A stretch of 64,000 bases of DNA from Monocercomonoides exilis PA203 (taxonomy: Eukaryota; Protista; Preaxostyla): positions 558,001 through 622,000 of the forward strand of contig LSRY02000041.1 in the NCBI GenBank assembly GCA_001643675.2, in the 5' to 3' direction. Below the pieces are notes generated by a model. It ran no database searches. It saw only the letters and a list, made by a program, of their open reading frames with translations, and was not told the DNA's origin. A program made the translations under genes and the position numbers. Positions 1 to 39,315 of the stretch are shown one piece after another. The first letter of the stretch is position 1, and the number at the start of each line of letters is the position of its first letter.

Positions 1-3000
1 GATAAAGTTGAAGGAGAAGAAGAAGAAGAAGAAGAAGAAATTGAAGAATATGTCGGATTCTCATTCATTCTTTCTTCTTCTCTTCCTTCTCCTTCTTCTC
101 CTTCTCCTTCTCTTTCTCTTTCTCTCTTCCTCACAATCAACGAGCTCATTGGTGTCTTCAAGCTAAACTCCTTTGGCCTCTGTTTGTTATCTGCTTCAGA
201 CTGCATCTTCAAATACTGATCAAACGTCTGAAACTCATCCATCGACAGAGAAAAAGAGATGTTTTGCTTGAATTTGTATGACAGTATCGATGCTTCTGTC
301 ATTTTGCAACTGCTCTTGTTCTTGTCTTTGTTGTTTCTATTTCTTTTGCTTTTTCTTTTGCTTTTTCCTTTTGCTTTGATATCTTCTTCTCTTTGGCTGT
401 CAGGCTCTTCTTCTCTTTGGCTTTCTGGCTCTTCCTCTTCTTCCTCTTCTTCCTCTTCTTCATTTCCTGTTTCCTTCACATTCATCTTCCTCTTCACTCC
501 AACCTTCACGTTCATCTTCATCTCCATCTCCACATCCACATCCACCTCCTCCACTGCCTCCATCCTCAGCAACCTCTTCTCCTCTTCTGTAAGCTCCAGC
601 CCCAACGAATGCACTCCACTCATTGACAAAGACGGCAAAACTGTCTGCATGTCCTTCTGACTCCACGCCGTGCGAGAGAAAAACATCATCGGCAGCAGCT
701 TCTTGCTGAACCACTCACGATCATAACTCAGTGCTCTATTTCCTCCTCCTCCTCTTCCTCCTCTTCCTCTTCCTCCCTCTCTTCCTCCTCCCCCTCCTCC
801 ACTGCTTTGTACTCGTTCTCCTGCTCTTCTTGATCGGCTTCCATGTGCCCCACCTACAATCATGTTGAAAATTTTTTCTGATTCATTTAAACCAGAAGAA
901 GAAGAAGAAGAAAGAGAGGAAGAAGAATTCGAAGGAGAAGAAGAAGAAGAAGAATTTGATATTCTTCCATTTCCCGAGCACATAAACCCTTCTTCTTCCT
1001 GAAACACCCGTTTATCTGGATAGAAAGAGCCGAGGAGAAGAGGAGAATCTCTTATGAAAGGGATGCATTCAATGACACCCGTGGCAAAGAGCAGAGAAGA
1101 AGAAGGGTGGAAAAGGGAAGGGGAGACAGTGGTGCTGGTGAGGGTGTAGACTTGAGGGAAAGGGAAGAGGGAAGATTGGAGAGAGAGGGAAGAAGAGGAA
1201 GAAGCAGAAGAAGCAGAAGAAGCAGAAGAAATAACAGAATCTGCCTTTCTGTTCAGATTCTCATTCGCGAGAGGAGAAGAAGGAAAGCTCCATTTGATTG
1301 GGAGAGGGGGATAATGGTGTCTGATGTTGCGAGAAAGAGAGACGAAAAGAAAGCGAATGATTTGAGCGAAGCAGCTGCTGGGTGAGAAAGAAGAGAGGGA
1401 AAGAAGCATTCCGCGGAAGAAGCGGAGAACAAGGGCAGAACGATGAGAAGTAACGAGATGGAGATAAGAGAGGAGTTTGGAGTAGGAAGAGGGGGGGAGG
1501 GAGAGATTGGAAGGAAGGAAGAAAGAGGAAGAAGAGGAAGAGGAAATGGAAGAGGAAGAAGAAGAAGATGATGATGAAATTGATGATGAAATTGAAGAAG
1601 ATGAAGATGAAGAAGAATTTGAAGAAGAACCAACAAATTCGTCTTTCATTTCGTGTTCAACAAAGAATCGGATGGTTCTCTTCATCCAATTCCAACTTTT
1701 GTCCATCTCTTTCTTGTCTCTCTTCTCCATTTTCTCAATCGAACTTATCATTTTCTGCAAATCTTCAATCTTCAATGATTTTTCCCAAAATTGAATATCT
1801 TCCTTTTTTTCCCCTTCTCCTTTGAAATCTTCTTCTTCTTCTTCTTCTTCTTCCATTTTCCCTTCTTTCTCCTTCATTTTTTTCATTCCCTCGTATTTCT
1901 TCATCAGCTTCTTCTTCATTTCTCTTCTCTTCTTCCTTCTTTTCAATGTCTCTCTCATTTTCTCTCTCTCCAATTTTGTTTGAGTCGCCTCTAAAAAGCT
2001 GAAAGGAGGTGCTGCATACACCAAAGAAACAGGCAAAGTGTTATTCTTTGATGACGAAGAAGAAGAAAATGAAGAAGAAGAAGAAGAGTTTGATGAATGA
2101 TTTTCATTGTTTCTTCCTCTTCTTTCATTAAATTCAACATTTTTGTTTGTTTTTTCCAGTTTTCTTTCATTTCCCTTGTTGCAAAGAGAAGCAAACTGAG
2201 AAACAGACTCTGTTGTGTGTGGATTGGGCAGAGGTGACTCAAGAATTGCCTTTGCCAGAAGAAATTCTTCATTCTCAAGGAACTTTTGAAACGCTTCTTT
2301 ATCTTCGTTTATTTCTTTGCCTTCTTTTATTTCTTTCTCATTCTTTTGATATTTGTTTGAATTTCCTTTTTCTTCTTTCCCTTTTTCTTTTTCTTTCCCT
2401 TTCCCTTTCCCTTTTCTCTTTTCTTCTTCTTCTTGCAACTCAACAAATCTCTTATTCCTCATCAACATTTCTTCCTTCTTCACACACTCCTTCACAAACT
2501 CCATTTTTTGCTTCAGTTCCCTCTGCACTTTCTCTTCTTCGTCATACAACACACGAAATGCATCCAAAATTGGCAGAAGAAGAGAAGAAGCCAAATATGT
2601 GTCAGCAAACAGAGGAGCCAAAAGATTCATCAAATTTGACTCAAAATGTGACAGCTGAACGGAAAGAGGAGGGATAGAAGATTGGGCAATGGCTGAGGAA
2701 ATGGAGGTGGACGAATGAAAAGCAGAAGAAGAGGAAGAAGAGGAAGAAGAGGAAGAAGAGGAAGAGGAAGAGGAAGAAGGTGACAATGATGATGATGACG
2801 ACGACGACGAAAGAGAAGAAGAAAGAGAAGAAAGAGAAGATGTTGGGAGTTTTGATGCAGGTGCTGAATTAAGCTCTTCTTCTTGTTCTGGCTCGTCATT
2901 GTGAAGTGAAGATAAAGATGGCAAGGCAAGACGAGAAGAGGAAGAAGAGGAGGAAGAAGAAGAAGAATCAGAAGGAGAAGTTGATGTCTGTGTTATTTTT

Positions 3001-4298
3001 GGAGGACACAGGCAACTTACTCCAATCTCTTGTTTGTTTTGCTTAGCAGCATTGTTTTCCTCAGAATAGCACACAAAACGCCGGATAATCTGCATCTTCT
3101 TCTCCTCTTTCTCTCGCTGCGCCTTCGACATCTCTATCAACCGCTGCTGCTGTTTCGAATTCGATGCCGAATTCGCATTGTTCTTCTGCTGATAATCTGC
3201 TCCATTCCCTTCTTGTTTTCCCTTCTTCTCCTTCTTATTCGCTTCACCCCCAATTTCTGATTCATCCCCGTTACTCTCCCCAAGCACCCACTCCACAGCC
3301 AGCGCCCTCATCCACATTGCAGTCAGACTGCGACACACCTGCACGTAATTCTCACAGGGCGGCAGTGAAATTGGCAGATAACCTGCAGCAGGATAGCGGA
3401 AGGGGGAAAGACTGCCAAAGTTGACGATGGCTGACTGGTGGCCGGACATCGAAATGGCTGGGAAGAACACGAAATGGGGGCTGGCGTCGATGTCGGCTTG
3501 GCTTTTGACTGAAGAAGGCACACGGGACAGAGGAATACGGGAATATGCAATGCCCATTGATTCTCCGTTCAGTAAAAATTCTATGCGGCCGTAGGGCATG
3601 CCTTCTTCACCGTCTTTTTGAGCTTTCGTTTCATCTTCATCATACTTGGCATCAAAGTCAAGAAGCACTGATAAAATATCTCCGGCTTCCCATCTCTGTC
3701 CGTATCCTGGGCAAGATGAGTTCCATGATAAAACTCGATATCCATCGCAAGCAAAACTAAGGAAATCGTCTCCAACTCCTTCTCCAGAAGTAAAAGGCGT
3801 ACTAACTTGACACACTCCAATTTGCATCAATCCGCGAGTTTGCAGCTGAACCTCGTACTGCCATTTTCCAGCAAAAAGTCCAGTGTTACATCTGATTGAA
3901 GAGAATTCGTCAAAAGATTCCAATTCCCCAAACTCTCCAAATTTCATATCTCCATTTAAAGTCGTTCTGTCCCAATCACTGTTCAAAGGACCAATTCTAC
4001 CACGAATTTTTGCTTGATTTGTGAAATAATTCGTTTCCTTGTTCTCTGAAAGTGGATAATTAAGATCATTTGGAGAAGTCATTAATATTTTCTGCAGTTT
4101 TTGAATAGAGAAAGGAGTTGTAGTTGCCAAAAAGGGACGAGACATTTCAGAATGAGGAAGACTCAGCCCAACAACATGAAGAACTCTCGATAAAAGGTCA
4201 GAGCTATCTAGATATGGAAGAGCAAGTTTTCCATTAAATAAAAATGTTGCAACTTCCCTGTTTAGCGAACTTTTCACTTTGTCATCCTTTTGAGGCAT
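1..4298 (-). CDS. RNF123: RNF123/KPC1(RKP)-like E3 ubiquitin ligase, N-terminal SPRY domain; 3' end runs off the window
   Basis: ATG at 4298 (MPQKDDKVK..., in-frame TAG just upstream). The ORF track lists no terminated ORF in this frame, and position 1 is still in the Ser-rich frame. Translation GRIGP...FSSIRCNTGLFAGKWQYEVQLQTRGLMQIGVC...FTSGEGVGDDFLSFACDGYRVLSWN...YGQRWEAGDILSVLLDFD...FLLNGESMGIAY...FFPAISMSGHQSAIVNFGS..PFRYP matches the RNF123-type SPRY domain. The RING domain is not visible in the window. Confidence 0.75.
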   Translation of the reverse strand, partial: MPQKDDKVKSSLNREVATFLFNGKLALPYLDSSDLLSRVLHVVGLSLPHSEMSRPFLATTTPFSIQKLQKILMTSPNDLNYPLSENKETNYFTNQAKIRGRIGPLNSDWDRTTLNGDMKFGEFGELESFDEFSSIRCNTGLFAGKWQYEVQLQTRGLMQIGVCQVSTPFTSGEGVGDDFLSFACDGYRVLSWNSSCPGYGQRWEAGDILSVLLDFDAKYDEDETKAQKDGEEGMPYGRIEFLLNGESMGIAYSRIPLSRVPSSVKSQADIDASPHFVFFPAISMSGHQSAIVNFGSLSPFRYPAAGYLPISLPPCENYVQVCRSLTAMWMRALAVEWVLGESNGDESEIGGEANKKEKKGKQEGNGADYQQKNNANSASNSKQQQRLIEMSKAQREKEEKKMQIIRRFVCYSEENNAAKQNKQEIGVSCLCPPKITQTSTSPSDSSSSSSSSSSSRLALPSLSSLHNDEPEQEEELNSAPASKLPTSSLSSLSSSLSSSSSSSSLSPSSSSSSSSSSSSSSSSSSAFHSSTSISSAIAQSSIPPLSVQLSHFESNLMNLLAPLFADTYLASSLLLPILDAFRVLYDEEEKVQRELKQKMEFVKECVKKEEMLMRNKRFVELQEEEEKRKGKGKGKEKEKGKEEKGNSNKYQKNEKEIKEGKEINEDKEAFQKFLENEEFLLAKAILESPLPNPHTTESVSQFASLCNKGNERKLEKTNKNVEFNERRGRNNENHSSNSSSSSSFSSSSSSKNNTLPVSLVYAAPPFSFLEATQTKLEREKMRETLKRRKKRREMKKKLMKKYEGMKKMKEKEGKMEEEEEEEEDFKGEGEKKEDIQFWEKSLKIEDLQKMISSIEKMEKRDKKEMDKSWNWMKRTIRFFVEHEMKDEFVGSSSNSSSSSSSSISSSISSSSSSSSSSISSSSSSSFFLPSNLSLPPSSYSKLLSYLHLVTSHRSALVLRFFRGMLLSLSSFSPSSCFAQIIRFLFVSLSRNIRHHYPPLPIKWSFPSSPLANENLNRKADSVISSASSASSASSSSSLSLQSSLFPFPQVYTLTSTTVSPSLFHPSSSLLFATGVIECIPFIRDSPLLLGSFYPDKRVFQEEEGFMCSGNGRISNSSSSSSPSNSSSSLSSSSSSGLNESEKIFNMIVGGAHGSRSRRAGERVQSSGGGGGGREGGRGRGGRGGGGNRALSYDREWFSKKLLPMMFFSRTAWSQKDMQTVLPSLSMSGVHSLGLELTEEEKRLLRMEAVEEVDVDVEMEMKMNVKVGVKRKMNVKETGNEEEEEEEEEEEPESQREEEPDSQREEDIKAKGKSKRKSKRNRNNKDKNKSSCKMTEASILSYKFKQNISFSLSMDEFQTFDQYLKMQSEADNKQRPKEFSLKTPMSSLIVRKREREREGEGEEGEGREEERMNENPTYSSISSSSSSSSPSTL

Positions 4299-5575: not shown

Positions 5576-6577
5576 TCAGCTTGTATTCTGTGATATTTGG
5601 TATGTCACAAACTTCCTGCTCTTCAACAGTCCTCTTTGAATATCCTTCTTCTCCTTCACTCCAAACTCTCTCTTCCTTTTGTTGATGATCCTTTGCTCCA
5701 TATCCCATTCACTTTCTTCTTCTTCTTCTTCTTCCTCTTCTTCCTCCTCCTCTTCTTCACTGTCATCATCATCATCGTTGTTATCATCATATCCTTCTTT
5801 CTTTCCTCTTCCTCTTCCTCCTCTTCCTCCTCTCATCCCTTCTTCACCAAACAAACCTCCCTTCTTTTCTCCTTCTCTCCCTTCCTTCCTCTCTTTCCCT
5901 TCTCTCCCTTCTCTCCCTTCTTTCCTCTTCTCCACTCTTCTCATCCCCACAAATTCACACCAGGATCCGCTGTGTAGCAAATGCACTCCAATCTTCAGAG
6001 GAACAGGCAAGTTGCACACAACCAAGGGCTGTTCAATGCCATCAATGGAAATTGAAGCAGTGCGAAATTCAGAAGAGGGGGGAGAAGAGGAAGAAGGGAG
6101 AGAAGAAAGAAGAGATGAAGGAGAGGAAAGAGAAGTAAGAGAAGAAGGAGAAGAAGAAAGAGAGGATGAAGGAGAGGAAGAGGAAGAGGAAGAGGAAGAA
6201 AAAGAAGGTGAGCGAAATGAGGAAGATAAACAAAACTTATCCATTTGAGAATTTTGCAATGTCACAGAAGAAGAAGAAGAAGAGGAAGAATAAGAAGAAG
6301 AAGAAGTTTGAGCAAAATCTGTTGTTATTTGAGAAGGTTCGTTTGAAAGATTGATATTCAAAGAAATCAAAGAAGAATTGGAAGCTCCATTGTTTCCGCT
6401 TGTGTCTCGTCCATTTACCCACACTGCTCCTCTGAAGAGAGAAAGAGAAAGAGAGAGAGAGAAAGAGAAAGAGAGAGAGAGAAAGAGAAAGAGAAAGAGA
6501 AAGAGAAAGAGAAAGAGAGAGAGAGAGAGAAAGAGAAAGAGAAAGTGAAAGTGAAAGTGAGAGAAAGAAAAAGAGAA

Positions 6578-6612
<35 letters not shown>

Positions 6613-6763
6613 AAGAGAAAGTGAAAGTGAAAGTGAGAGAAAGAAAAAGAGAAAGAGAAAGAGAGAGAGAGAAAGAGAAAGAGAAAGAGAAAGAGAGAGA
6701 GAAAAAGAGAAAGAGAAAGAGAAAGAGAAAGTGAAAGTGAAAGTGAGAGAAAGAAAAAGAGAA

Positions 6764-6794
<31 letters not shown>

Positions 6795-6917
6795 AAGAGA
6801 AAGAGAGAGAGAGAGAGAAAGAGAAAGAGAAAGTGAAAGTGAAAGTGAGAGAAAGAAAAAGAGAAAGAGAAAGAGAGAGAGAGAAAGAGAAAAGAGAAAG
6901 AGAGAGAGAGAAAGAGA

Positions 6918-6962
<45 letters not shown>

Positions 6963-7138
6963 AGAGAAAGTGAAAGTGAAAGTGAGAGAAAGAAAAAGAG
7001 AAAGAGAAAGAGAGAGAGAGAAAGAGAAAGAGAAAGAGAAAGAGAGAGAGAAAAAGAGAAAGAGAAAGAGAAAGAGAAAGTGAAAGAGAAAGAGAGAGAG
7101 AGTAAGAGAAAGAGAAAGAGAAAGAGAGAAAGAGAGAA

Positions 7139-7171
<33 letters not shown>

Positions 7172-7237
7172 AAGTGAAAGTGAGAGAAAGAAAAAGAGAA
7201 AGAGAAAGAGAGAGAGAGAAAGAGAAAGAGAAAGAGA

Positions 7238-7276
<39 letters not shown>

Positions 7277-7360
7277 AGAGAAAGAGAAAGTGAAAGTGAG
7301 AGAAAGAAAAAGAGAAAGAGAAAGAGAAAGAGAAAGAGAAAGAGAAAGAGAGAGAGAGAA

Positions 7361-7395
<35 letters not shown>

Positions 7396-10300
7396 AAGAG
7401 AAAGTGAAAGTGAAAGTGAGAGAAAGAAAAAGAGAAAGAAATTATAAAGAAGGAAGGAAATATGAATGATTGAGAAAAGAGGAAGGGGAAAATTTAAAAA
7501 AAGATTCATTAAATTTATCAAAGTAAATAATTTTCCACATAATTAGAAAATGATATTTTCATTCGTTCATTTCAAAAAAAAATGATTTTATGTTTAACAA
7601 AAACAGAAGACACAGAAAAAAAGGTTTTATGCACTTTTCGTTTGAAGAAAGAAAACATACGTTTTGAGAGCAAAGGAAATGGCTTCTGAAATTTGAAATA
7701 AAAAATTCAGTTGAAATCAAAAAAGAAAAAGAGTTTGTGGTTAATTTTTTGAAAAATGATAAAGTTTTTAAAAAATAAAAGAAAGAAAGAAAGAAAAAGA
7801 AAAAAATTGAGAAAAGAAAAAAATGAAAAGTAATAAAATGAAAAGAGAAAAAAAGAGAGAAAAAAAGAATAAATTGATTAATTCTATTTGAAAGAAATAT
7901 AAAACAACATACGGGGATCAAATCTAATATCTGTCTTTGGCTTCACTTTGTAGTTAGCAGGAAGAATGCATACGTCTATAAGCAGGAAAGGAAAGAAATA
8001 AAATTGAAAATAAAATGTTTGAATATAAAATTGTTTGAGAAAATAAAAGAAGAAAAACAAATATCTTTATGTTTCTCCACAAAAAATGCTATCAAAAATA
8101 AAAAGGTAATTGAATTTCACATTTATTTCTCTTTCACAATTCTTCTCATTTCTTCCCATTTCTTCCTTCTCTTCCTTCTCCTTCCCTCTTTTCCTTCTCT
8201 CCAAACACAACAAAACACAACAAAACACAACAAAACACAACAAAACACAACAAAACACAACAAAACACAACAAAACACAACAAAACACAACAAAACACAA
8301 CAAAACACAACAAAACACAACAAAACACAACAAAACACAACAAAACACAACAAAACACAACAAAACACAACAAAACACAACAAAACACAACAAAACACAA
8401 CAAAACACAACAAAACACAACAAAACACAACAAAACACAACAAAACACCACAAAATTAAACGCATACACTTTGAATCATGATGTGCCGAGCTTGAGCCAA
8501 CCCTCAAATCCACCTTCCATCTCCCTTCTTCCAGTGCTTTCCCCACAAAACACGTTATGTGGCTGCTTCTTCTCAGTTTGAACTTCAGCTTCTCAATCGA
8601 CACAGAAGAAGAAAGAGAAGGATGCACATTCCATTCAGGGTAGTATATCTTGTCGATGGGGGGAGGAGGAGGAAGGGGAGAAGAGTGGAGGTGAGAGGAA
8701 GAGGAAGAGGAAGAAGAGGAGGAGAAGGAAGAAGAGGAGGAAGAAGAGGAGAAAGAAGAGGAAGAAGGAGAAGGAGATGAGGAAGAAGAGGAGGAGGAGG
8801 AGGAATGAGAGGGAGAAGATGAAGAGAATTCTGAAGAGAATAAAGATTCTGGCAATGGAAGACTTGCCGATGGAGAAGAAGGAGAAGAAGAAGAAGGAGA
8901 AGGAGAAATGATGAATTTGGAGAAAAGAGAAGGTGTTTGAAGTGTTGTTGTTGTTGTTGTTGTTGGTATCTGTGAATGTGCAAGTGATGGTGAATGTGAA
9001 GAAGAGGAAGATGAAGAAGAAGAAGAAGAATTAATTGGAGAAGATGAAGTTGAATAAGAAGTGGATGGATTGATGTACATAGAAGGTGAAGTGGAAGAAG
9101 AAGAAGGAGAAATTTGATTGAATGATGTTGAAGACAAAACAGGAATGAGAGAAGAAAAAGGTTGAATGAAGCTTTCATTGGAAGAAGAAGGAGAAGAAGA
9201 AAAGGAGGAAGAGGAAGAAGAAGAAGAAGATGTTGGTGATGGATTGGATGTTTGAATGTTGTCTGAAGGAGAAGGAAGAGAAAGAGAAGAAGGAGAAGGA
9301 GATGAAGAAGAAGAAGATAATCTTAAAGCAGCAGCTGAATCAGACAAGTTCACAGAAAATGAATTTGGTGAAATGGAATCAAAAGAAAAAGAAGGCGAAG
9401 GAGAAGGAGAAGAAGAAAAGGAGCAAGTTGAGGCAACTTCTGGATGAGGAAGGTAAAAATCATCAAAAACAAGTTTTTCACCTTCTTTTTCTGTCTCATT
9501 TGTGATATTTGATACAATTTTTATATTTCTTTCCTTTTTGTCTTCGAATTCTTTTAAATTCATTTCTTTCTTTTTGTTCAAAATATTTTCCTCTTCTTCT
9601 TCTTCTTCTTCTCTTTCTCCTTCCTCTCTTCTTTCTCCTTCCTTCCCTACCATCATCTTCCTCCTCAAACCTTCCATCTTCTCCATCTTCTCCTTTATTT
9701 CCCTCAACTCCCTCAGTTCCCTCTCCAACCTCCAATTTTCCCTCCTCAGCATATCCACCTCACTTTCCCTCTCTCTCTCCCTCTCCTCTGCCTCCTTCTT
9801 CGCCTTCTCCGCTTTCCTCAGCTTCATCTCCAGTTTCGACACAACTTTCCTCCTCTTCAAACTCCTCTCGTCTTTGTCTTCAATGTACTTCAGCAGCATC
9901 TTGCAGCCGTCACAGAGAATGTGCGAATAATCGCCTTTGGCTCTGATACTGCCTAAACGCGACATTTCACTGGGAAATTTGATCTTTTGAGACAAAATTA
10001 GAGGGGTTTCTGTGCTTTTTGGGTCAAAATTGATAAGTTTTTGGGGTTTTGTTCCTTCTTCTTCTTCTTCTTCTTCTTCTTCTGCAATTTCTGTTGATGT
10101 TTGCTTCATCTTCTTGATCTTCTCCATTTTCAGGTCTTCTTTGGAATTTTTATTTTTGTTCTTTTTCTTCTTCTTTTCTTTCTCTTTCTCGTTTTCATTT
10201 TCATTTTCTTCAGTTTCCTTTGAAATTATATTGTTTATTTCTTTTTCTTTTTTCTCTTTTCTTTCTGTTTTTTCGCTTTTATCGTTTTTTTCATCAAAAG

Positions 10301-17525: not shown

Positions 17526-18980
17526 AATGGGTCATGATCAAATTGAAAATTTCGATAAATGCTTTTAGTTAAAACATTTTGCATTTTTTGATATTTATCA
17601 TCGTTTTTTGTGTCAATTTCTTTCAATAACTCAAATATGGGACAAAATATTTTGCTTCAAGCATTTTCATTGTAAAATGATGCACTTTTCGTTGACTTTT
17701 TGAGATCAAAAAACAAAATAAAAATGGGTCCATTTTTTGACATTCGTGAAATATCACAACACTTTCTGTTTTGATTTCAATAATGTTTGTTTACAGATAT
17801 GAAAATCAAATTTATTTTGAAATCTGAGAAAGCGAAATAAAGTTATGAGTGAAGCAATTTTTTTGTGCCTTGTGCAAAAAAAGCTTGAAAGTTCGTATTT
17901 TCCCCCATATGATCTCGTTTTTTCCTTGTATGAGATTTTAAAAAGAAAATATTCGTTCTTTTCTATTTCATCAATCATTTCATTGACTTGTGATTTCTTA
18001 ATGGCAAAACATTGATTAATGATGATTATTGTGTTAATTTATCATATTTTCATTTTTTGAAATGCGTTGATGAGAATTTATTTTCAAAATTGTCGATATC
18101 AGCATATTAATAAAAATCAGGTTTCACACAACAAATTGGATTTGGCACTTTGCTTTAATCATATGCGTATTAATATCATGTAATAATGAGATATTGTTGA
18201 GCTCACTTTACACTTTTGTTATTTTTTTGTAATTTAATTGATTTCCTTTTATCCTTCAATGCAAAGCAATTAACAAATTTAAAAGGAGCAGTATTTAAAA
18301 ACGAGTTGTGTTTGTTAAAGAGATAAAATAAAACTCTGGTTTATTCAGAGAAAATTATTATTTTCTAATTGAATAAGCAATGCTTCAAGATTAAAAATTT
18401 ATTAATTGGATATAATATCAAACCAGTGTTTTATTTTTTATTTTTAATTTTATTTTATTATATATTTTATTATATATTTTATTATATTTTATGATATTTT
18501 TTATGGTGCAAATTTCAATTTCAATTACACTTCTGTAACATGACAAATTACAAAATCATATGTTTGTCACAAAAAAAAGAAGAAAAAATTAATTAATAAT
18601 ATCAAGTTAATAAAAAACAATTCGAATGAGAGCGAAAATTTTAAAAAAACTTTCGATATCTTTGGATTAAATTTATTGAAAGAATTAGAAATATCTGCCT
18701 TTTTCTCATTTTTCAGTGACAGTCAGTGACGGTCAATGACAAATTGTGACATAAAAATTTCACAACCGACGTTTTCTGTAAAAAAATTTCTGTTGGTTTC
18801 TTCTTCATCTAAAAAAAAATACGATTTTTTTAAAATAACAAGAATTGTTATATTTCGATTTTCTTATAAATTATTTGAATTATTAAGAATTGTGAAATCG
18901 AATAAAACTACCCTTTTTGATAAATCTTAAATATCTTGTCAGTCATTTTGTCATTGTTTCAATTTTCTCTTGTCATATCA
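17526..18980. mobile_element. Older partial copy of the right arm of the hAT-like element at 29659-33108
   Basis: 17636-17907 aligns by eye with 31797-32067 (e.g. GCGAAATAAAGTTATGAG, AAGCTTGAAAGTYCGTATTTTCCCCCA). The TGAC-motif cluster at 18716-18770 parallels 32852-32900. Termini are decayed. Confidence 0.6.
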
Positions 18981-29040: not shown

Positions 29041-30119
29041 TGTTGAAGGTATAAAAAATATATTGTGTGATCGGCTTAATAAGAAGAAATAAATCGAAAA
29101 AGTTAAATTTGTAAAATATAGAAATGTTTAATAATCAAAACGAAATCATGAAAAATAACCACATATACCTTTAAACATTTAGTGTTTTAAATATTTCTTG
29201 TTAATGATTTTTAACATTGTTTTTCTACAAGGCGAAAAAAGAAAAACAATTTTGTTTGTAAACTGCTGTTGCTAAAAACGAAGAAAGCAGTAATTACCTT
29301 ATGAGCACTGAATAAAATGGAACAGAAGTTGCCGTTGGTGCAAAAGTTTTAAAGAAACAGTTTGCATTTGCGAAGAAATAAACCAAAAGTTTTCAGAAGC
29401 TTTTATGATTTGTATATTGGGAAAAATGAATATTTAATTGTAATAAACGTACAAACTCTCATTATATAACTCATATCTTCGATTGCATTAGTTAGAATAG
29501 CTTTTTAAACGAATTATCGAATTATTCCATTTTTTCGAAGTTGATTATTGAAAGATCAAAGTTTTTTCAAAAAGAGAATCAAAATAAACTTCAGTATTTC
29601 ATATCAATCTTTTATGCAAATTATTAAATGTTATCTATTTTCATATTTGGAACATTCCTAAGCCTGGGTGTCGTGAAGAAAAAACACCGTCACGTCCGTC
29701 ACCAGTTTTCCACTCACAAAAAAAAAAAGCTTTCAATGGAAAAGAACAACAGAAATATTTTTATTATTAAAAATGTTCATTAAGAAAGTATTTATGAGAT
29801 TTAAAATGAATGATCATGAGATCCCATTACAACATGATTCAAATAACAATGCAAGTTATTTTTTATATTATTCGAAGAAACATGCAATTTTCTTTACGGA
29901 ATTGTGCGAATTTTGAAATTGTTTAGAATATTGTTTGTTTGAATAGCATTTTAAATATTTTCTTTTCATTTTTTGTTTGTTCAATAAGATCAACAAACAT
30001 TGTGCTGTTTCATTGAAATGACAATTTCAAAATACAAATAAATAGAATTTGATCAAAAAAGATCTCAGTGTATCTGTTGATATTTTGTATTTCATGATTA
30101 TTGCATTGATTATTTATTT

Positions 30120-31330
30120 TTCTTTTTGAAGAATTGTTTTGCGAATTGGAGCATTTCAATGAAGGTGGACAGAGAAAGAAAATGGAGGAAATGAATGAAA
30201 TAATTGATGAAATGAATGAAGAAGAATTCAAATCTGTCTTCGCAAAAAAAAAAAAAATGGTTCGATGAAACGGATGAAATGATTAAAGAATAGAAACTAT
30301 CGATGGGAAATGCGATTTTTCTGTTGAAGCATGTTGGATATTGCATTGTTTTGAAAGATATGAGGGTCTTAGGCTTTGGGTTTTCTTCATTGAGCGAAAG
30401 AATGAAAGAGATGATAATTGATGAATATGAGAAGAAAAAAGATGAAAAGCATTTAACCAATCTATGTGAATGTTTTGCTTTGCTGAATGATTAGAAAATC
30501 CTAATGAATTGATATCAATCATTGTGCCTTGCCTTATAAAAGCTGCATTTTGGAAAGAGGAAAACGAAGAAGCTCAAAAAGAAGCGGAAGTGACGTTGCT
30601 TGCGTTGAGCAACATCAAATTTCATGTATGAACATTATTATTTCCTTTTGATATTGTTGTTATTTTCTAATTTCTAATTCGTTTTTTTGGCAAGAACTGT
30701 ATATGAATGAAATCAAAGAGATTATCCTGTTTCATCAGGAACATCACAATCTAACACAACTTGCATGTCAGTCTGCATGGGAGTTTTTGATCAACAGATT
30801 ATCCTGCGACAGATCTTTGGAAGACACAATCGTGAATGAACTGCATTTTGCAAGGGAAGCAGCAAGAGAATTAGAACAGTTGACAAGATGTGTGGATTGG
30901 AAGAGAAAACAAGAGGGGAAAGGAGAGAAATGAGAAAAAGAAGTGTTCATAATTATGAGATTGATCCAAGCTCTGGAGCATTTTTTCACGATTGCAAATT
31001 GTTGAATGAAGAATCAGTTGGATTTATTGGCAGCGTTTTTCAGGTATTTCGAGTTGCGAAGGATGATCACCGAGTTATTAGTTACACATGCATTTATTCC
31101 CAGAGAAATACTGTGGATAGCAGAGCTTTTGAAGTTGAAGACCTGTTAAAGAGTTGCGTGGCTGGCACTGTTTTAAAAGAACCACAATAATTAACACTAA
31201 ATAACAAAATGGTACGTTAATGAATTGAATTGTTTGTATTTCTTTTTGAAACTTTTTTGAAGATTGGATAAAAATACAGATAAAGAAATGGAAAAAGCAA
31301 AAAGGAAATATTTGTAAAGGAATAAGAAAA
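30120..31330 (+). pseudogene. Decayed member of the helical 'QKEVEMALLALSNI/HQEHHNLT' multigene family
   Basis: FEELFCELEH..., EEAQKEAEVTLLALSNIKFH followed by a GTATGA donor (30626), then ELYMNEIKEIILFHQEHHNLTQLACQSAWEFLINR. Multiple stops and frameshifts. Paralogous to the 35827 and 37996 genes. Confidence 0.88.
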
Positions 31331-32348
31331 ATATTAATGTGCAATCATTTTGTTTCATGAAATTCTTCATTAATTACAATAAAATTTGAGGGCTTTGATT
31401 TTTCGTTTATTTTTATTGACCATTTTATGAAAGAGTAATGAATAGAGAAATTTTTCATTTTGAACTCAATCTTTTTATATTTCACAAAATAGAAAACAAG
31501 GAATATTTTCAAGCCTTTTTCTATTCTGTTCAGTCAATAATTTTCTTTAACAAAATAATGTGAATCGAAAAATATAGACAAATCCTTTATATGTTTCTAT
31601 TTTTAGAATTTTTTCTACAAAAATCTTCTTCCAAAGACTTATCTGCATGTCAGTTTTATTTAAAACATGGATAATATCTCGTTTTCTCGTCATTTCAAGA
31701 GTTATCTTCTTCTTTTCTTTTTCAAGTTTGTGTTCATCTCACCTCCTCATTTATTTCGCATCAAAAACTGAAATTTCAAACAACTTCAGAAGAGAGTTGG
31801 GGCAAAATTTTTTGCTTCAGGCATTTTTATTGAAAAATTATGCACTTTTTATTGACTTTTTTCGATCAAAAAACATGGAAAAATAGTTTTATTTTTTGAC
31901 TTTCGTGAAATGTTGAAAAACTTGATGTTTTGATTTCAACGATGCATGTTTACGAATCTGAAAATCAAATTCATTTAAAAATCAAAGAAGGCGAAATAAA
32001 GTTATGAGCAAGACAATTATTCAGTTCCTTGTGCATAAAAAGCTTGAAAGTCCGTATTTTCCCCCAGTTATTGGAAGAGGATAAAACCTGATCGCAAAAA
32101 ATAAAAGTTGATGATAAAAAGTTATGAAGGAATATGAAAAAAAAACCTATTCTATAAATGTGGAGAAAAATATCTATGCTGATGAGAAAAAAAATTGCAA
32201 TTTGTCCGAAAGACAAATATTAAATATACAAAATGTTTAAAATTAAAATGGATAGAAATGTTTCTTTTGAAAATCCTTTATCTTATACAAATCATCAAAC
32301 TTATGTTTTGCAAACAACAATTTTGATCAATCTGAGTTTTTACATATG

Positions 32349-32640
32349 TCAGTTCAAACATCTCATTGCTGATCTGCAAGTGATGCTTTGCAGATTATCA
32401 AAGGAAAATATGTTATCAACATTTTTTAATATGTGTTTAGCTTTTGAAAACTTTGATGAAATACATTCATCTGTAGTTAAGCGGTGTAATTTGAAATGGA
32501 TCAGAATTTTCAAATGATATCATTGATGACATAAATACTCCATGCAAGATCTTTAAACATTTTGAAAATGAATTTTTCCAAATAAGATTTAAAATCAAAA
32601 AATTTTTCGCGTAATTCAAACCAAGTCAATATTCTCTATT
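32349..32640 (-). pseudogene. Possible remnant of a hAT transposase C-terminal dimerisation domain
   Basis: Broken frames ILTWFELREKF... and LTTDECISSKFSKAKHILKNVDNIFSFDNLQSI resemble the hATC pattern WW...P.TS..sER.FS.a..I....R..Ls.enl. Similarity judged by eye only. Confidence 0.4.
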
Positions 32641-33967
32641 CCAACGTTTGAGTTATCGTGAAAAACGATAAATAGTATGTTGAAGAAGATTTTACAGATT
32701 TGTCATTTTTTCTTTAAAAAAAATATTTTAATTATCATAATTAATAAGTAAATTTTTGGTTGTTTTATTAGAATAACAAAATCGAGACTTACTTTTAATA
32801 TTTCTTATTAAAATTATTCTATTGCTCATTCTTTCGACTTTTTCAAATAGCTGACAGGAAGTGACGTCAATGACGTCAGCGACTTTAGTGACGTGTCAAA
32901 AATCCCATAGCCGCTTGCAAGTCAGTAAAAAATTTATTACGGTTAATTAGATTTTCACAATTTTCAAAAAAAATATATTTTGAAATTATTTGCATTAATG
33001 AAATAATAAAACAATTATGTTGGTTTTGCTTTGTGACGTGAAAATTTTTGTCACGTCCGTTAAAATTCGAAAACTTAACGTCAGAAGTCAGTACGTCACC
33101 CAGGGTTAAACATTCCATTCAAAATAGGATGTAGATTTTAAAAATAAGCAAGTCAATTCAAATAAACAGGGGTAATTTTAAATAACCCCCACAATTTTAA
33201 ATTATTTTTTCAATTTGAATAATTTGATTCAATCTGCATTGTATCTAATGATTAAATTAACAAAAAAATTTTTTAAATTATATTAAATAAAAAAAAAGAA
33301 TTATGAAGAAAAAAAATTCATCGAACAATAACTTTCGTTCTATTTGAAGTTTTCAAAAATTTTGTCTTTGCTTAAGAATATTTTGTTTTCGAATATAAGT
33401 CTTCGACTTTTATAGAAAGTTTTTCGACTTTGAACAAATTTTGGTGAAATAAAAATAAAAAAAAATGTGGGAAATAATCGTTCTGACAAATATTATCTGA
33501 AAAAAAATTGATATGTTTTGTTTTTGAAAAAAATGGATCAACTACAAAAATCTCCAAACAATTATTTCTCATTCCTCATTAATCACCAAAGTCATTTCAA
33601 TTAGTTAAAGAAAAACAAACAAAGAAGTTAATAATTTTTTGTAAGAACAAGAAATGCAGTCTTCATAAAAACACATGAAAACACTTCGAGAAATAAAGTT
33701 GATGCAAGAATTTCAAATTATCGAAATTGCAAAAATGAATCCAAAGGATACAAAAAATTCATAAAACATAATTTGTTAATAAAACTTTGCTAACACCAAA
33801 CAAAATTCTTTTATTGTTTGAAATCGATTTTGGGAAACAGCAACTATGAATGAAACAATTCAAAACCCATATGATGATGAGAAATCTTGCAAATGTCACA
33901 GTTTCAAATACTCAAAATGAACAAAAATAAAAAGAGTTTCACAACTTGATGAATATGAACTTCAAAA

Positions 33968-35826: not shown

Positions 35827-37233
35827 ATGGTTTGTTCATTATTATTTTTATTTGAAAGGTTTAATGCTTCAGCCTTTTACGATCATTGAAGATTTGTTAT
35901 TCAAACTGGAGCGCTGTACTGAAAATGAACAGAAGATCATTATTCAAAAGATGAATAGTGCTTTGGAAGAAATGAATTCTCAAATATTTGAACGAGCAGT
36001 TACAGAAGAAACATATAATTTCTTGGAAGAAATGATTGAAGAAAATATACTCTCAATGAGAAATGCAGTAACATTGCTGAAGCACATTGGATATTTTAAA
36101 AAATTGAATTTTATTTATTCTTGTAGCTTTAATGTTTCTTTATTGTTCAAAAGAATTGAAAAAATGATTAGAGAAAAAGAACAGAAAGAAAAAGAAAATG
36201 AAGAAAAGTTGTTTGCAGATCTATGCGAATGTTATCATATTTTGTGTAATTTTTTTGACTGTGTACCAGAAGAAATAGTTGCAGTTAGTGTACCTTGTCT
36301 TCTGAAAGTCGCGTTGAACAAAGGAGAGAGCGAAGAAGTCCAAAAAGAAGTGGAGATGGCTTTGATGGCCATGAGCAATGTGGTGAAGTGGGAGGTCTGA
36401 TGGATTTTGTATATTTTTTTGAATAATAATAAATTTTATTTATCACTTCACGAATTGAAAATTAGAATGCAGAAGAAGAGCTTTATCTGGATGAGATTAC
36501 AGAAATCATTCAATATCACGAAGAGCATCACAATCTCACGCAACTCGCCTATCAGTCAGCTTGGCAACTTTTGATTAACAGATTTATCATGGAAAGAAGA
36601 TTTGAGGATGTGATAATGAATGATTTGCATTTTGTGAGAGAAACGGAAAGAGAGTTTGAAGAGCTTTCAAGATGTGTGGATTGGAAGAGGAATGATGGTG
36701 AAAAGGGGAAAAAAGAAAAGAAAGAAGTGCAGATAATTAGGAATTGGATCAACCTTGTGAGTGATTCTTTGGAATATCACGAATTGTGGGAAGAGGGAAA
36801 TGTCGGAGTGATTCGTTGCCTTGTTGCGCTGTGCAGAGCAGCAAGAGAAAAAGAGCAAGAAGTTTTTGGAGATTGCCTTTGTGTATTTAATAGAATGTCC
36901 AGATATTCAACTGTTGGAACAGATGTCTTGCTGAAACATGGGGTTGTTGATCTGATTCTTGAAGAAATTCAGCGATCAACATTGAAAGACCTGATCATGT
37001 GGGAATATTTGCTATTCTTTTTGAACGTCTCAAAAAGATTGAAGGAAAAGACGGATAGAAATATTGACAAATCGATAAGAAAGACGACAAAAAGGGAGAT
37101 ATTTGAAGCACTGGAGGAAGAAGGATATGAAGATATCATTTCAAGCTTTCATGAGATTTTTGATTTTCTTAACGAAAAACTTTGTTGGACTCGATTATCA
37201 TTGAGCATTTCTGAATATTTTGTTAATGCTTAA
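35827..37233 (+). CDS. Helical-repeat multigene family protein of unknown function
   Basis: Intron 36395-36465 (GTCTGA..TTAG) joins QKEVEMALMAMSNVVKWE to NAEEELYLDEITEIIQYHEEHHNLTQLAYQSAW in frame, ending LEEEGYED...EYFVNA*. The start is uncertain (ATG 35827 plus intron 35830-35872, or ATG 35864). Confidence 0.8.
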
Positions 37234-37995: not shown

Positions 37996-39315
37996 ATGTT
38001 TTGTTTTCTTGAAGAAAAATATCTGGAACTGGAAGGTTTTTCGTTGGATTTGCAGGCTCGAAATATGTTTGAAATGAACAAGCTTATTTACAAAATGGAA
38101 ACAGAAGAATTGAGCGACATTCTCACAGAAACATTGTTCTCGGAAATTGACAAAATGATTGGAAGAAATCAACTTTCACTTGAAAATGTTTTTGTGTTTT
38201 TGAAGCGTGTTGAGTGTCGCATCGTGTTGAATCATGAAGTGAGATGTGAATTTGAGTTTTCTTCGTTATTCAGAAGATTTGAGAAGATGATAATGAAAGA
38301 AGAAAAGAAAAAAGAAGGAAGAAATGAGCAATTGCTGATCGATCTCCTTGAATGCACTCTGTTGCTGACTGATTTCTTCACTCAAGAAGAAACAGTCCTG
38401 TTTGGTGTACACTGTCTTCTAAAGGCTGCTTTTAACAAGGAGGAAAACAAAGAAACACAAAAAGAAGTGGAGATGGCTTTGCTTTCGTTGAGTAATATCG
38501 GTTGGGAGAAGGTGTGAGTTTTTGCTGTTCTTTGGTGATGAATTTGTTTTTGTGTTCGATTGTGAAATCAGAAAATGGCAAAAGAGTTGTATCTGAACAG
38601 AATAAAGGAAATCATCAGAAATCATCAGGAACATCACAACCTGACGCGACTTGCCTATCAATCATCCTGGTATTTTCTGATAAAAAGATTTCATAATGAT
38701 GGAAGCTTGGAAGATGTGATTGTGGATGAGCTCCATTTGATGAAAGAGACAACGAGAGAATTGGAGGAGTTGGCAAAACATGTGGATTGGGTGGGAGAGG
38801 CGAGAAAGCTTGGGAAGATGACGGAAGTGCATGTGCTGAAACGATGGTTCAACATTCTGAACTCATATTTTGACTGGGTCGAGTCGAAAGGAGGAGACTG
38901 TTCAGATTTTGTTCAATTCATTGTTGAGCTGTGCAGAGTCAAAATGAAGAATGATGCCGAAATGCTTCGAGCACTGTTGAATCTTATTGGAATCATGGCC
39001 GACAACTCATCGATAGAAATTGAGAGCATTTTGAAAGGAGAAGCCATTGATTTTGCTTTGGAAGAGATTTGTCAGTCGACATTGAACAACAACATTGCAA
39101 GGAGCTGCATCAAAATATTTTTGCATCTCGATAAAAGGCTGAGCAAAAAGACAGATTGTGAACACGAAGAAGCAGGATTAACAGCGAAAAGAGAGATAAA
39201 TGACAGATTTGAAGAAGAAGGATTCCAAGATGAAATTATCAGTTTGTCAAAAATCACATTGGCGCATTCCAATAAATTGCTGATTGAATTCAACGAGCAT
39301 TATCCACTTTTCTGA
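37996..39315 (+). CDS. Helical-repeat multigene family protein (tandem paralogue); 5' end uncertain
   Basis: Intron 38512-38571 (GTGTGA..TCAG) at the same position joins QKEVEMALLSLSNIGWEK to KMAKELYLNRIKEIIRNHQEHHNLTRLAYQSSW. FEEEGFQD lies near the C-terminus. Confidence 0.8.

What the first reader, a model, noticed from the sequence alone, without database searches (positions are those of the whole stretch)
29651..33116. hAT-like element with a perfect 8-bp TSD carrying an intron-containing copy of an expanded host gene family (Pack-hAT)
Seen: AACATTCC|TAAGCCTGGGTGTCGT ... ACGTCACCCAGGGTTA|AACATTCC delimits 3450 bp, with CpG-rich subterminal motifs (GTCACGTCCGT at both ends, clustered TGACGT). 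Inside is a near full-length decayed paralogue of the genes at 35827 and 37996, with the intron donor at the same position. Established: an 8-bp TSD, short TA-initiated TIRs and subterminal motif clusters are hAT hallmarks, and a retained intron means DNA-level rather than retro copying. Inference: the element moved as a unit with its cargo. The perfect TSD alongside heavily decayed cargo suggests the last jump postdates much of the decay.
Basis: partly seen in the sequence, partly recalled or inferred. Interest (0 to 1): 0.85.

Follow-up and report, generated by a model that had tools for sequence, protein, structure and literature searches.

The report
Gene-carrying hAT transposon family, oxymonad
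This is a 3.45-kb transposase-less hAT "cut-and-paste" transposon of Monocercomonoides exilis that, like almost every member of its family, carries a dead two-exon copy of an expanded armadillo-like host gene; it is a clear protist case of transposon gene capture, a process already known from plants and fungi.

Summary
The window is from Monocercomonoides exilis. An 8-bp duplication (AACATTCC) flanks 16-bp inverted ends (14/16 match) enclosing 3450 bp.

- **Recurrence.** The end motif occurs 60 times in the genome and 0 times in the reversed control. Ten copies have perfect 8-bp duplications.
- **Superfamily.** hAT. A related element shares the terminal 14 bases and encodes a 939-codon frame whose only matches among solved structures are Hermes transposase.
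- **No transposase inside.** The window copy holds no transposase remnant and no Dimer_Tnp_hAT signal.
- **Cargo.** It is not a private capture. Of 20 copies tested, 18 carry the same two-exon gene at the same place and orientation, with the intron and always broken.
- **Moved as a unit.** A sister copy on contig C27 has its own duplication (ATGAAAAT) and shares four stop codons and two frameshifts. The element therefore jumped with dead cargo.
- **Exchange with free genes.** The two halves of the cargo give conflicting trees, which indicates gene conversion with free paralogues.
- **Possible two-gene relatives.** Coordinates alone suggest about 6.2-kb relatives that hold both this gene and a transposase. 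This was not checked by sequence.

This is a new member of a known kind. Other first-stage notes on this genome also report hAT elements with cargo.

The parts
29651..29658 (.). left copy of the 8-bp target-site duplication, AACATTCC
   Evidence: identical to 33109-33116
29659..29674 (+). terminal inverted repeat, End A (TAAGCCTGGGTGTCGT; one change from the family consensus ...GTGACGT)
29675..30112 (+). End A subterminal, non-coding region; GTCACGTCCGT at 29689-29699; shared only with the E1 subfamily copies
30113..30625 (+). cargo pseudogene, exon 1 homology (first ATG at 30182); stop at 30291 shared with the C27 copy; private stop at 30492 and a 7-nt insertion near 30242
30626..30681 (+). 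retained intron; GT donor in the same column as in free genes; acceptor AG changed to CG at 30680-30681
30682..31360 (+). cargo pseudogene, exon 2 up to the ancestral stop (31358-31360); shared stops at 30931, 31188, 31258 and 1-nt deletions at 30982, 31306; the stop at 31188 is shared by all six E1 copies
31361..31798 (+). element-specific 3' region, part 1 (no coding signal; shared with E1 copies)
31799..32065 (+). nested 267-bp MITE (ends GGGGCAAAAT / ATTTTCCCCC) with 4-bp duplication AGTT (31795-31798, 32066-32069); absent from the five other E1 copies compared; clean single-AGTT empty sites in C27, C68 and C8
   Evidence: read depth about 30,000 against about 100
32066..33092 (+). element-specific 3' region, part 2, and End B subterminal region (ACGT cluster at 32864-33093; GTCACGTCCGT at 33050-33060); no transposase relic
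33093..33108 (-). terminal inverted repeat, End B (reads TAACCCTGGGTGACGT on the minus strand)
33109..33116 (.). right copy of the 8-bp target-site duplication, AACATTCC
35852..37233 (+). free paralogue 1 of the cargo family (two open exons; context, not part of the element)
37996..39315 (+). free paralogue 2 (MONOS_2150 model at 38095-39312, 60-nt intron; context)

Best explanation
Window 29659-33108 is one copy of a family of transposase-less hAT DNA transposons of Monocercomonoides exilis.

**Shown**
- The ends are TAASCCTGGGTGACGT. The two subterminal regions differ and are rich in ACGT motifs. Insertion makes an 8-bp target duplication.
- At a fixed place, 0.5-0.8 kb from End A and reading inwards, the family carries a genomic two-exon copy (intron kept) of a lineage-specific, expanded gene family. 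That family encodes proteins of about 400 residues predicted to be armadillo/HEAT-like.
- The carried copy is a pseudogene in every element examined. It was already dead before the E1 subfamily radiated and before the window and C27 copies separated, so the element has been transposing as a unit with dead cargo.

**Inferred**
- A hAT transposase supplied in trans moves it. Relatives with the same termini encode one.
- The gene entered an ancestor of the family once, by DNA-level capture during repair or replication at a transposon end. The short elements then arose, like Ds from Ac, by loss of the transposase from an element of about 6.2 kb holding both genes.
- The 5' 830 bp of the cargo has since been overwritten repeatedly by gene conversion from free paralogues.
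For: **Recurrence.** There are 30 forward plus 30 reverse exact end motifs against 0 in the control. With up to 2 mismatches there are 126 plus 147 against 13 plus 12.

**Duplications.** Perfect 8-bp duplications occur at C2a, C8, C9, C10, C11, C13, C18, C68 and the window and at C27. T at position 2 or A at position 7 occurs in 13 of 20 cases.

**hAT identity.** Elements ending in TAAGCCTGGGTGACTT hold a 939-codon open frame starting 553 nt from the end.
- That frame has a Dimer_Tnp_hAT hit: 23.8 bits, over the cut-off, in the six-frame genome search, and 18.6 bits, under it, on the isolated frame.
- Its only PDB matches are Hermes, at the CxxH and SEAxxERxFS motifs.
- End B of our family resembles the transposase-side end of those elements.

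**Non-autonomy.** There is no PF05699 hit in C38:587659-591108 even at E<=1. There is no tblastn hit of the 939-aa frame in the window at E<=0.01; across all the elements at E<=10 the only hit is one 18-residue match at E 5.5.

**Cargo.** It is found in 16 of 18 End A loci plus C27 and C10b, always plus-oriented and starting 476-800 nt from End A, and never near End B. All copies have stops or frameshifts. The intron donor column is shared.

**Unit transposition.** C27 is 90-98% identical and has a different duplication. It shares lesions with the window copy. The stop at exon 2 codon 170 is in 6 of 6 E1 copies and the stop at codon 190 in 5 of 6.

**Conversion.**
- Between E1 copies, element positions 455-1283 are less alike than the flanks. 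For C68 against C8 the figures are 84% against 90-96%.
- The 3' tree gives E1 as one clade at 100/100.
- The 5' tree rejects E1 as one clade (AU 0.007) and rejects all element-borne copies as one clade (6e-10). It places window, C27, C68 and C8 with the free C32/C80 genes.

**Free genes.** They have intact exons and no end motif within 1.5 kb.
Against: - No transposase with exactly these termini was read as sequence. The 6.2-kb architecture rests on coordinates from three searches.
- No empty site or excision footprint was seen in the available contigs, and there is no RNA evidence.
- The first five end bases (TAAGC / TAACC) do not fit the classical hAT YARNG start.
- A single capture is inferred from position and orientation, and from an AU test that merely fails to reject it (p 0.17).
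- Only 40 of 2458 family candidates were scored in the DNA search, so the sample of free genes is biased.
Confidence: 0.8

Rival explanations
1. Repeated independent captures. The E1 and E2 subfamilies, and lineages within E1, each picked up a copy of the same abundant host gene separately, as Pack-type elements do. There was no single old capture followed by gene conversion.
For: Element-borne copies are not one clade in the whole-region and 5' trees; AU rejects it. Between E1 and E2, only the termini and the cargo can be aligned.
Against: The cargo has the same position, orientation and intron in every subfamily. The 3' half of the cargo makes E1 one clade at 100/100 with shared stop codons. 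One clade for all elements is not rejected there (p 0.17). The conflicting segment has sharp, recurring boundaries at element positions 455 and 1283, as expected of conversion tracts.
Confidence: 0.12
2. Reverse direction. The armadillo-like gene is the transposon's own second gene, and the large 'host' family was seeded or spread by the element. Free copies would then be elements that lost their ends.
For: About 6.2-kb units seem to carry the gene and a transposase together. The family is confined to this species in the protein search. Family searches give 628-2458 first-look candidates. Free copies sit in dispersed repeats longer than 3.8 kb. In the published genome, 35% is unclassified repeats (PMC8767320).
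Against: Free genes are intact and lack end motifs within 1.5 kb. Element-borne copies are all dead and sit on long branches among free genes. Homology between free and element copies stops at the gene's edges.
Confidence: 0.07
3. Not hAT. The element belongs to another cut-and-paste superfamily that also makes 8-bp duplications (P, Mutator-like, Merlin and others), and the nearby hAT transposases are unrelated nested insertions.
For: The end start deviates from YARNG. The hAT genes inside the large pairs on C8 and C2 are nested or foreign.
Against: The terminal 14 bases are identical to those of elements whose only long frame is a hAT transposase starting 553 nt from that end. In C35 the exact end lies within 9 bp of the place predicted from that geometry. 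hAT domain hits lie 3084-3122 bp from End A in five copies, after subtracting the nested insertion in C15.
Confidence: 0.01

Closest known systems
Pack-TYPE transposons, in particular the Pack-hAT elements of maize (PMC8903248)
   Same: Non-autonomous, with inverted ends, an 8-bp duplication and no transposase. The interior is made of host gene DNA copied at the DNA level.
   Different: Here one nearly complete gene with its intron is a fixed feature of the whole family (18 of 20 copies). Plant Pack elements hold assorted fragments that differ between elements. Here the gene also seems to be present in transposase-bearing relatives. The host is an oxymonad protist.
hAT transduplication of histone H3 in Dothideomycete fungi (Pyrenophora tritici-repentis, PMC3538342; Pseudocercospora fijiensis, PMC6710886)
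   Same: A hAT family with an 8-bp duplication carries a host gene and amplifies it. In P. fijiensis the full-length elements hold both a transposase and the captured gene, and the copies are dead.
   Different: The fungal capture lacks introns, so a transcript was captured. Here the intron is kept. The fungal source is a single-copy housekeeping gene. Here the source is an already expanded family with which the cargo still exchanges sequence. Decay here is not by RIP.
Ac/Ds of maize (autonomous element and its internal-deletion derivatives; from general knowledge)
   Same: Short elements keep both ends and subterminal motifs, lack the transposase and depend on it in trans. A 664-bp derivative with only the ends exists (C10).
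   Different: The derivation of the 2.9-3.5-kb elements from the 6.2-kb units is inferred, not shown. Ds elements do not share a fixed host gene.
Hermes transposase (PDB 2BW3, 4D1Q, 6DWW)
   Same: It is the only solved protein matched by the 939-codon frame of the same-terminus relative, at the CxxH region and at the C-terminal SEAxxERxFS motif.
   Different: The match is weak (E 3.5e-4). The Monocercomonoides frame is longer, and no BED finger or DUF659 was detected by Pfam.

Membership tests
hAT superfamily (element level) | 8-bp target-site duplication | tested here: met
   The window, C2a, C8, C9, C10, C11, C13, C18, C68 and C27 are perfect. C1 and C23 match at 7/8.
hAT superfamily (element level) | short terminal inverted repeats with subterminal short-motif clusters | tested here: met
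   The ends are 16 bp and match 14/16 here. The conserved subterminal blocks are GTCACGTCCG (End A) and GGTGACTTCTGACGTGAC (End B).
hAT superfamily (element level) | ends begin with YARNG (feature recalled from the literature) | tested here: not met
   The ends begin TAAGC, TAACC or TAGCC, so the fifth base is C. Other hAT elements of this genome that carry transposases also start TAGGC or TAAGC.
hAT superfamily (element level) | weak target preference nTnnnnAn (recalled from the literature) | tested here: inconclusive
   13 of 20 positions fit. P is 0.0025 against window composition and 0.024 against the duplications' own AT content. Only ten sites were used.
hAT superfamily (protein level) | transposase with the C-terminal hAT dimerisation region and catalytic motifs, encoded between these ends | tested here: inconclusive
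   None is present in this element. One is present in elements sharing the terminal 14 bases. For exact-end units (C14, C15, C35, C38, C42, C45) there are only coordinates.
Pack-TYPE (Pack-hAT) | non-autonomous: ends and duplication but no transposase | tested here: met
Pack-TYPE (Pack-hAT) | interior derived from host gene DNA, copied at the DNA level | tested here: met
   Homology to MONOS_2150 and to intact free genes, exon by exon, with the intron retained.
Pack-TYPE (Pack-hAT) | cargo acquired by the non-autonomous element and absent from the autonomous relative | tested here: inconclusive
   The End A plus cargo block recurs 3.1 kb from a hAT domain hit, and 6.2 kb from a second end, in several copies.
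MONOS armadillo-like gene family (the cargo) | sequence homology over both exons with the family's intron position | tested here: met
   The fold assignment comes from the Atlas model only (TM 0.55-0.73 to importin-alpha, plakoglobin and ARMC8). There is no Pfam hit.
MONOS armadillo-like gene family (the cargo) | open reading frame (a functional member) | tested here: not met
   The window copy has 6 alignment-frame stops plus frameshifts. All 14 element copies tested are broken.

The most novel reading that the evidence does not exclude
The armadillo-like gene may be a long-term resident second gene of an autonomous hAT lineage rather than passive cargo of a Pack element. In that reading the lineage is a unit of about 6.2 kb, with the transposase and the gene convergent between TAASCCTGGGTGACGT ends. 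Its deletion derivatives would keep exchanging sequence with the chromosomal paralogues by gene conversion, possibly in both directions. A transposon family would then be coupled to the diversification of one of the expanded, species-specific gene families that make up the large 'unclassified repeat' fraction of this genome.
Probability: 0.3. Interest if true: 0.65.

Novelty: new member of a known kind. Interest (0 to 1): 0.5.

Why it matters
Monocercomonoides exilis is the reference amitochondriate eukaryote. Nearly half of its genome is repeats, 35% is unclassified, and the genome papers found give no account of its mobile elements (PMC8767320).

This finding does three things.
- It defines a concrete hAT family by its ends, its duplication and its subfamilies.
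- It shows that the family hauls an intron-bearing copy of an expanded host gene.
- It gives sequence evidence that transposon-borne pseudogenes and chromosomal paralogues recombine.

It extends gene capture by hAT elements from plants and fungi to metamonads. It also helps explain why gene families and repeats are hard to tell apart in this genome. It does not reveal a new mechanism.

Tried and rejected
There was no hit in the six-frame genome search at E<=1. Pfam found nothing on the open frames there. tblastn with a hAT transposase of this genome found nothing.

**Large end pairs as autonomous copies.**
- C8:56422-68675 is an E1 copy with a nested 9-kb hAT of a different kind, with ends TAGGCCTTTGCGAC and duplication GTTTTGCG.
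- C2:1489118-1498137 has unequal flanks. Its 924-codon hAT frame matches, in length and score, frames found elsewhere with no exact end motif listed nearby.

**Fetching the 6.2-kb units.**
- The search for homologous proteins on the transposase was blank.
- The look-up of encoding contigs leaves this genome out.
- The representative search returned mostly unnamed metagenome relatives at 24-33% identity.
- The far end of the same-terminus autonomous relative was not reached after two walking steps.

**Reads.** Four runs from one sample, available only as short contigs, showed no joint skipping 29659-33108 and included no RNA run. This says nothing about activity or expression.

**Flank test of the C14 unit.** It was swamped by a high-copy MITE.

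**Paralogous empty site for the window insertion.** None was found in the DNA held.

**Other blanks.** Pfam on the cargo family gave nothing above cut-off. Rfam found nothing in the window.

Exons were handled separately by reference.
Full report
**Source.** The window is G000:C38:558001-622000 of an 82.3-Mb assembly in 101 contigs. Protein hits are all MONOS_ genes of Monocercomonoides exilis. Size and contig number match the published Nanopore assembly of strain PA203 (PMC8767320).

**Observation.**
- AACATTCC lies at 29651-29658 and 33109-33116. It flanks TAAGCCTGGGTGTCGT (29659-29674) and the reverse complement of 33093-33108, TAACCCTGGGTGACGT, a 14/16 match.
- The degenerate end pattern hits the window only there, against 0.03 expected.
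- GTCACGTCCGT occurs 31 nt from the left end and 59 nt from the right end. ACGT and CpG are enriched at the ends.

**Recurrence.**
- The exact pattern occurs 30 times forward and 30 times reverse in the genome, against 0 for the reversed control. Many pairs lie 2.5-3.9 kb apart.
- With up to 2 mismatches there are 273 sites against 25 in the control.
- Flanks give perfect 8-bp duplications at nine pairs, and 7/8 at two more. The sister copy on C27 adds a tenth perfect one.
- The two ends are not alike beyond the repeat. End A continues GAAGAAAAAA...GTCACGTCCG. End B continues GGTGACTTCTGACGTGAC.
- A 664-bp copy on C10 has only the ends.

**Superfamily.**
- The window element has no transposase. 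There is no PF05699 hit on C38:587659-591108 at E<=1. Pfam finds nothing on its open frames. There is no tblastn hit of a hAT transposase of this genome.
- Elements ending in TAAGCCTGGGTGACTT share the first 14 bases. They carry a 939-codon open frame from nt 553 to 3369. Copies on C9 (two), C32 and C2 are 99.4-99.9% identical.
- That frame has a Dimer_Tnp_hAT hit. It scores over the Pfam cut-off in the genome search and 18.6 bits on the isolated frame.
- Its only matches among solved structures are Hermes transposase, at the CxxH region and the SEAxxERxFS motif.
- Its database relatives are unnamed metagenome proteins of 800-1000 residues. Some of these have the same domain at similar sub-threshold scores.
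- End B of our family resembles the transposase-side end of these elements (GTGACTTCTGAC against GTGACTTCAGAC).
- The genome holds several related hAT families whose ends start TAAGCC or TAGGCC.
- The duplications lean towards nTnnnnAn (13 of 20).
- I therefore file the element as a non-autonomous hAT. One caveat is that its ends do not start with YARNG.

**Cargo.**
- MONOS_2150 (P0001) maps to 38095-39312 with a 60-nt intron. It also maps to the element in three pieces, with a gap where the intron lies.
- Using the exons of intact free genes as separate queries, all 14 element copies tested contain exon 1 and exon 2 homology in the same order and orientation.
- Exon 1 starts 476-800 nt from End A in 16 of 18 End A loci, and the C27 and C10b copies also have the gene. 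It is never found next to End B.
- All element copies have stops or frameshifts.
- The GT donor is in the same alignment column in element-borne and free copies. The window copy has lost the acceptor AG.
- Free paralogues have open exons and no end motif within 1.5 kb. They lie in dispersed repeat units longer than 3.8 kb.
- The family has no Pfam match. The Atlas model of a member aligns with armadillo/HEAT solenoids.

**Transposition as a unit.**
- C27:420086-428392 is a sister copy, 90-98% identical by segment, that includes the cargo. It has its own perfect duplication, ATGAAAAT.
- It carries a nested 5.1-kb element with CAGT ends and a TA duplication.
- The window copy carries a nested 267-bp MITE with an AGTT duplication. 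The five other E1 copies compared lack the MITE, and C27, C68 and C8 show a clean single AGTT at the empty site.
- The window and C27 copies share stops at 30291, 30931, 31188 and 31258, and 1-nt deletions at 30982 and 31306.
- The stop at exon 2 codon 170 is in all six E1 copies, and the stop at codon 190 in five.
- The cargo was therefore dead before the subfamily spread.

**Exchange with free genes.**
- Between E1 copies, element positions 455-1283 are less alike than the flanks. For C68 against C8 the figures are 84% against 90-96%.
- C68 and C8 are 80-84% identical to the free C32/C80 genes over just that tract, with sharp borders.
- Trees of the two cargo halves disagree. In the 3' half the six E1 copies are one clade (100/100), and one clade of all element copies is not rejected (AU 0.17).
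- In the 5' half E1 monophyly is rejected (AU 0.007), and so is all-element monophyly (6e-10). Window, C27, C68 and C8 sit with the free C32/C80 genes.
- Rows left out were the partial copies C14, C2b and C23b, and the long-branch C26 copy.
- I read this as gene conversion, or template switching during repair. It is inferred from the incongruence.

**Transposase-bearing relatives with exact ends (coordinates only).**

The 1.5-kb End A plus cargo block of C14 recurs at 78-94% identity on C38, C47, C45, C21, C42 and C15.

| Copy | PF05699 hit from End A, opposite strand | Second end motif from End A |
|---|---|---|
| C14 | 3084-3122 bp | 6242 bp |
| C21 | none listed | 6219 bp |
| C15 | about 3111 bp after subtracting a nested insertion | about 6258 bp after subtracting a nested insertion |
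| C47 | none listed | about 6.3 kb after subtracting a nested insertion |
| C38, C45, C42 | 3084-3122 bp | not seen |

- In C35 an exact end lies within 9 bp of the place predicted from the transposase position.
- This suggests a unit of about 6.2 kb laid out as End B side, transposase, then the gene facing it, then End A. The short elements would derive from it by deletion.

**Comparison with what is known.** Pack-hAT elements are described in maize (PMC8903248). hAT families that amplified a captured histone H3 are described in fungi. In one fungus the full-length elements hold a transposase plus the captured gene, but the capture lacks introns (PMC6710886). I found no paper on transposons of this organism.

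**Scan notes.** Other first-stage notes on this genome mention hAT elements with cargo, and a MITE with GGG...CCC ends and a 4-bp duplication. They are unchecked apart from the MITE type, which I saw here.

**Verdict.** The finding is real, well delimited and correctly read by the first stage. It is a new member of a known kind. The added features are that the cargo is fixed across the family, that the cargo recombines with its free paralogues, and that it may belong to a two-gene autonomous element.

Noticed in passing
window 31799-32065 and 17638-17907: A MITE of about 267 bp with ends GGGGCAAAAT / ATTTTCCCCC and 4-bp duplications (AGTT; ATAT at the second copy). It is absent from the five other E1 copies compared, with clean single-AGTT empty sites in C27, C68 and C8. 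Its last 38 bp has read depth of about 30,000 against about 100 nearby, so it is a very high-copy family.
   Followed up: partly
L028:1623 onward and L035 up to 1500 (C27:420208-425328): A 5.1-kb element with CAGTTTGTG... inverted ends of about 29 bp and a TA duplication (Tc1/pogo-like). It is nested in the sister copy of the element at element position 3329.
   Followed up: no
L033:4114 onward and L039 up to 1500 (C8:59035-68037): A 9-kb hAT element of another family, with ends TAGGCCTTTGCGAC, duplication GTTTTGCG and a 900-codon transposase frame. It is nested in the C8 copy and explains the 12-kb end pair.
   Followed up: partly
L063, L074, L080 (C9:554516-559031) and C32:124976-129489: An autonomous-looking hAT family ending in TAAGCCTGGGTGACTT, with an uninterrupted 939-codon frame. 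Copies on C9 (two), C32 and C2 are 99.4-99.9% identical, which suggests recent activity. A family of deletion derivatives joins the first 454 bp or so to the 3' part (L061, L065, L067-L072). Its far end was not reached.
   Followed up: partly
L009:1-1500 (C9:1442200-1443699): A third related hAT (end TAAGCCTGTCTGACCTGAC, with a transposase carrying one stop) lies about 100 bp from the C9 copy of our family.
   Followed up: no
L017:1626-1857 (C14:179802-180033): A palindromic MITE-like repeat of about 235 bp with 1700 first-look candidates in the genome. It matches on both strands.
   Followed up: no
window 29659-33108 against C27 copy: Divergence between the two sister copies is uneven: about 2.5% over the first 1.28 kb but about 7.5% over the rest. 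Either the copies exchanged sequence, or the 5' part was homogenised.
   Followed up: no
window 6438-7439 and 8203-8455: A 1-kb (AGAGAA)n tract and 25 near-perfect copies of AAACACAACA. These account for the strong purine skew at 6-8 kb.
   Followed up: no
C2:1489118-1498137 (L005, L006): An End B ... End A pair 9 kb apart with unequal flanks (cgaaaact / tcgtaaac), enclosing a 924-codon hAT frame of another family. It is either rearranged or two separate elements.
   Followed up: no
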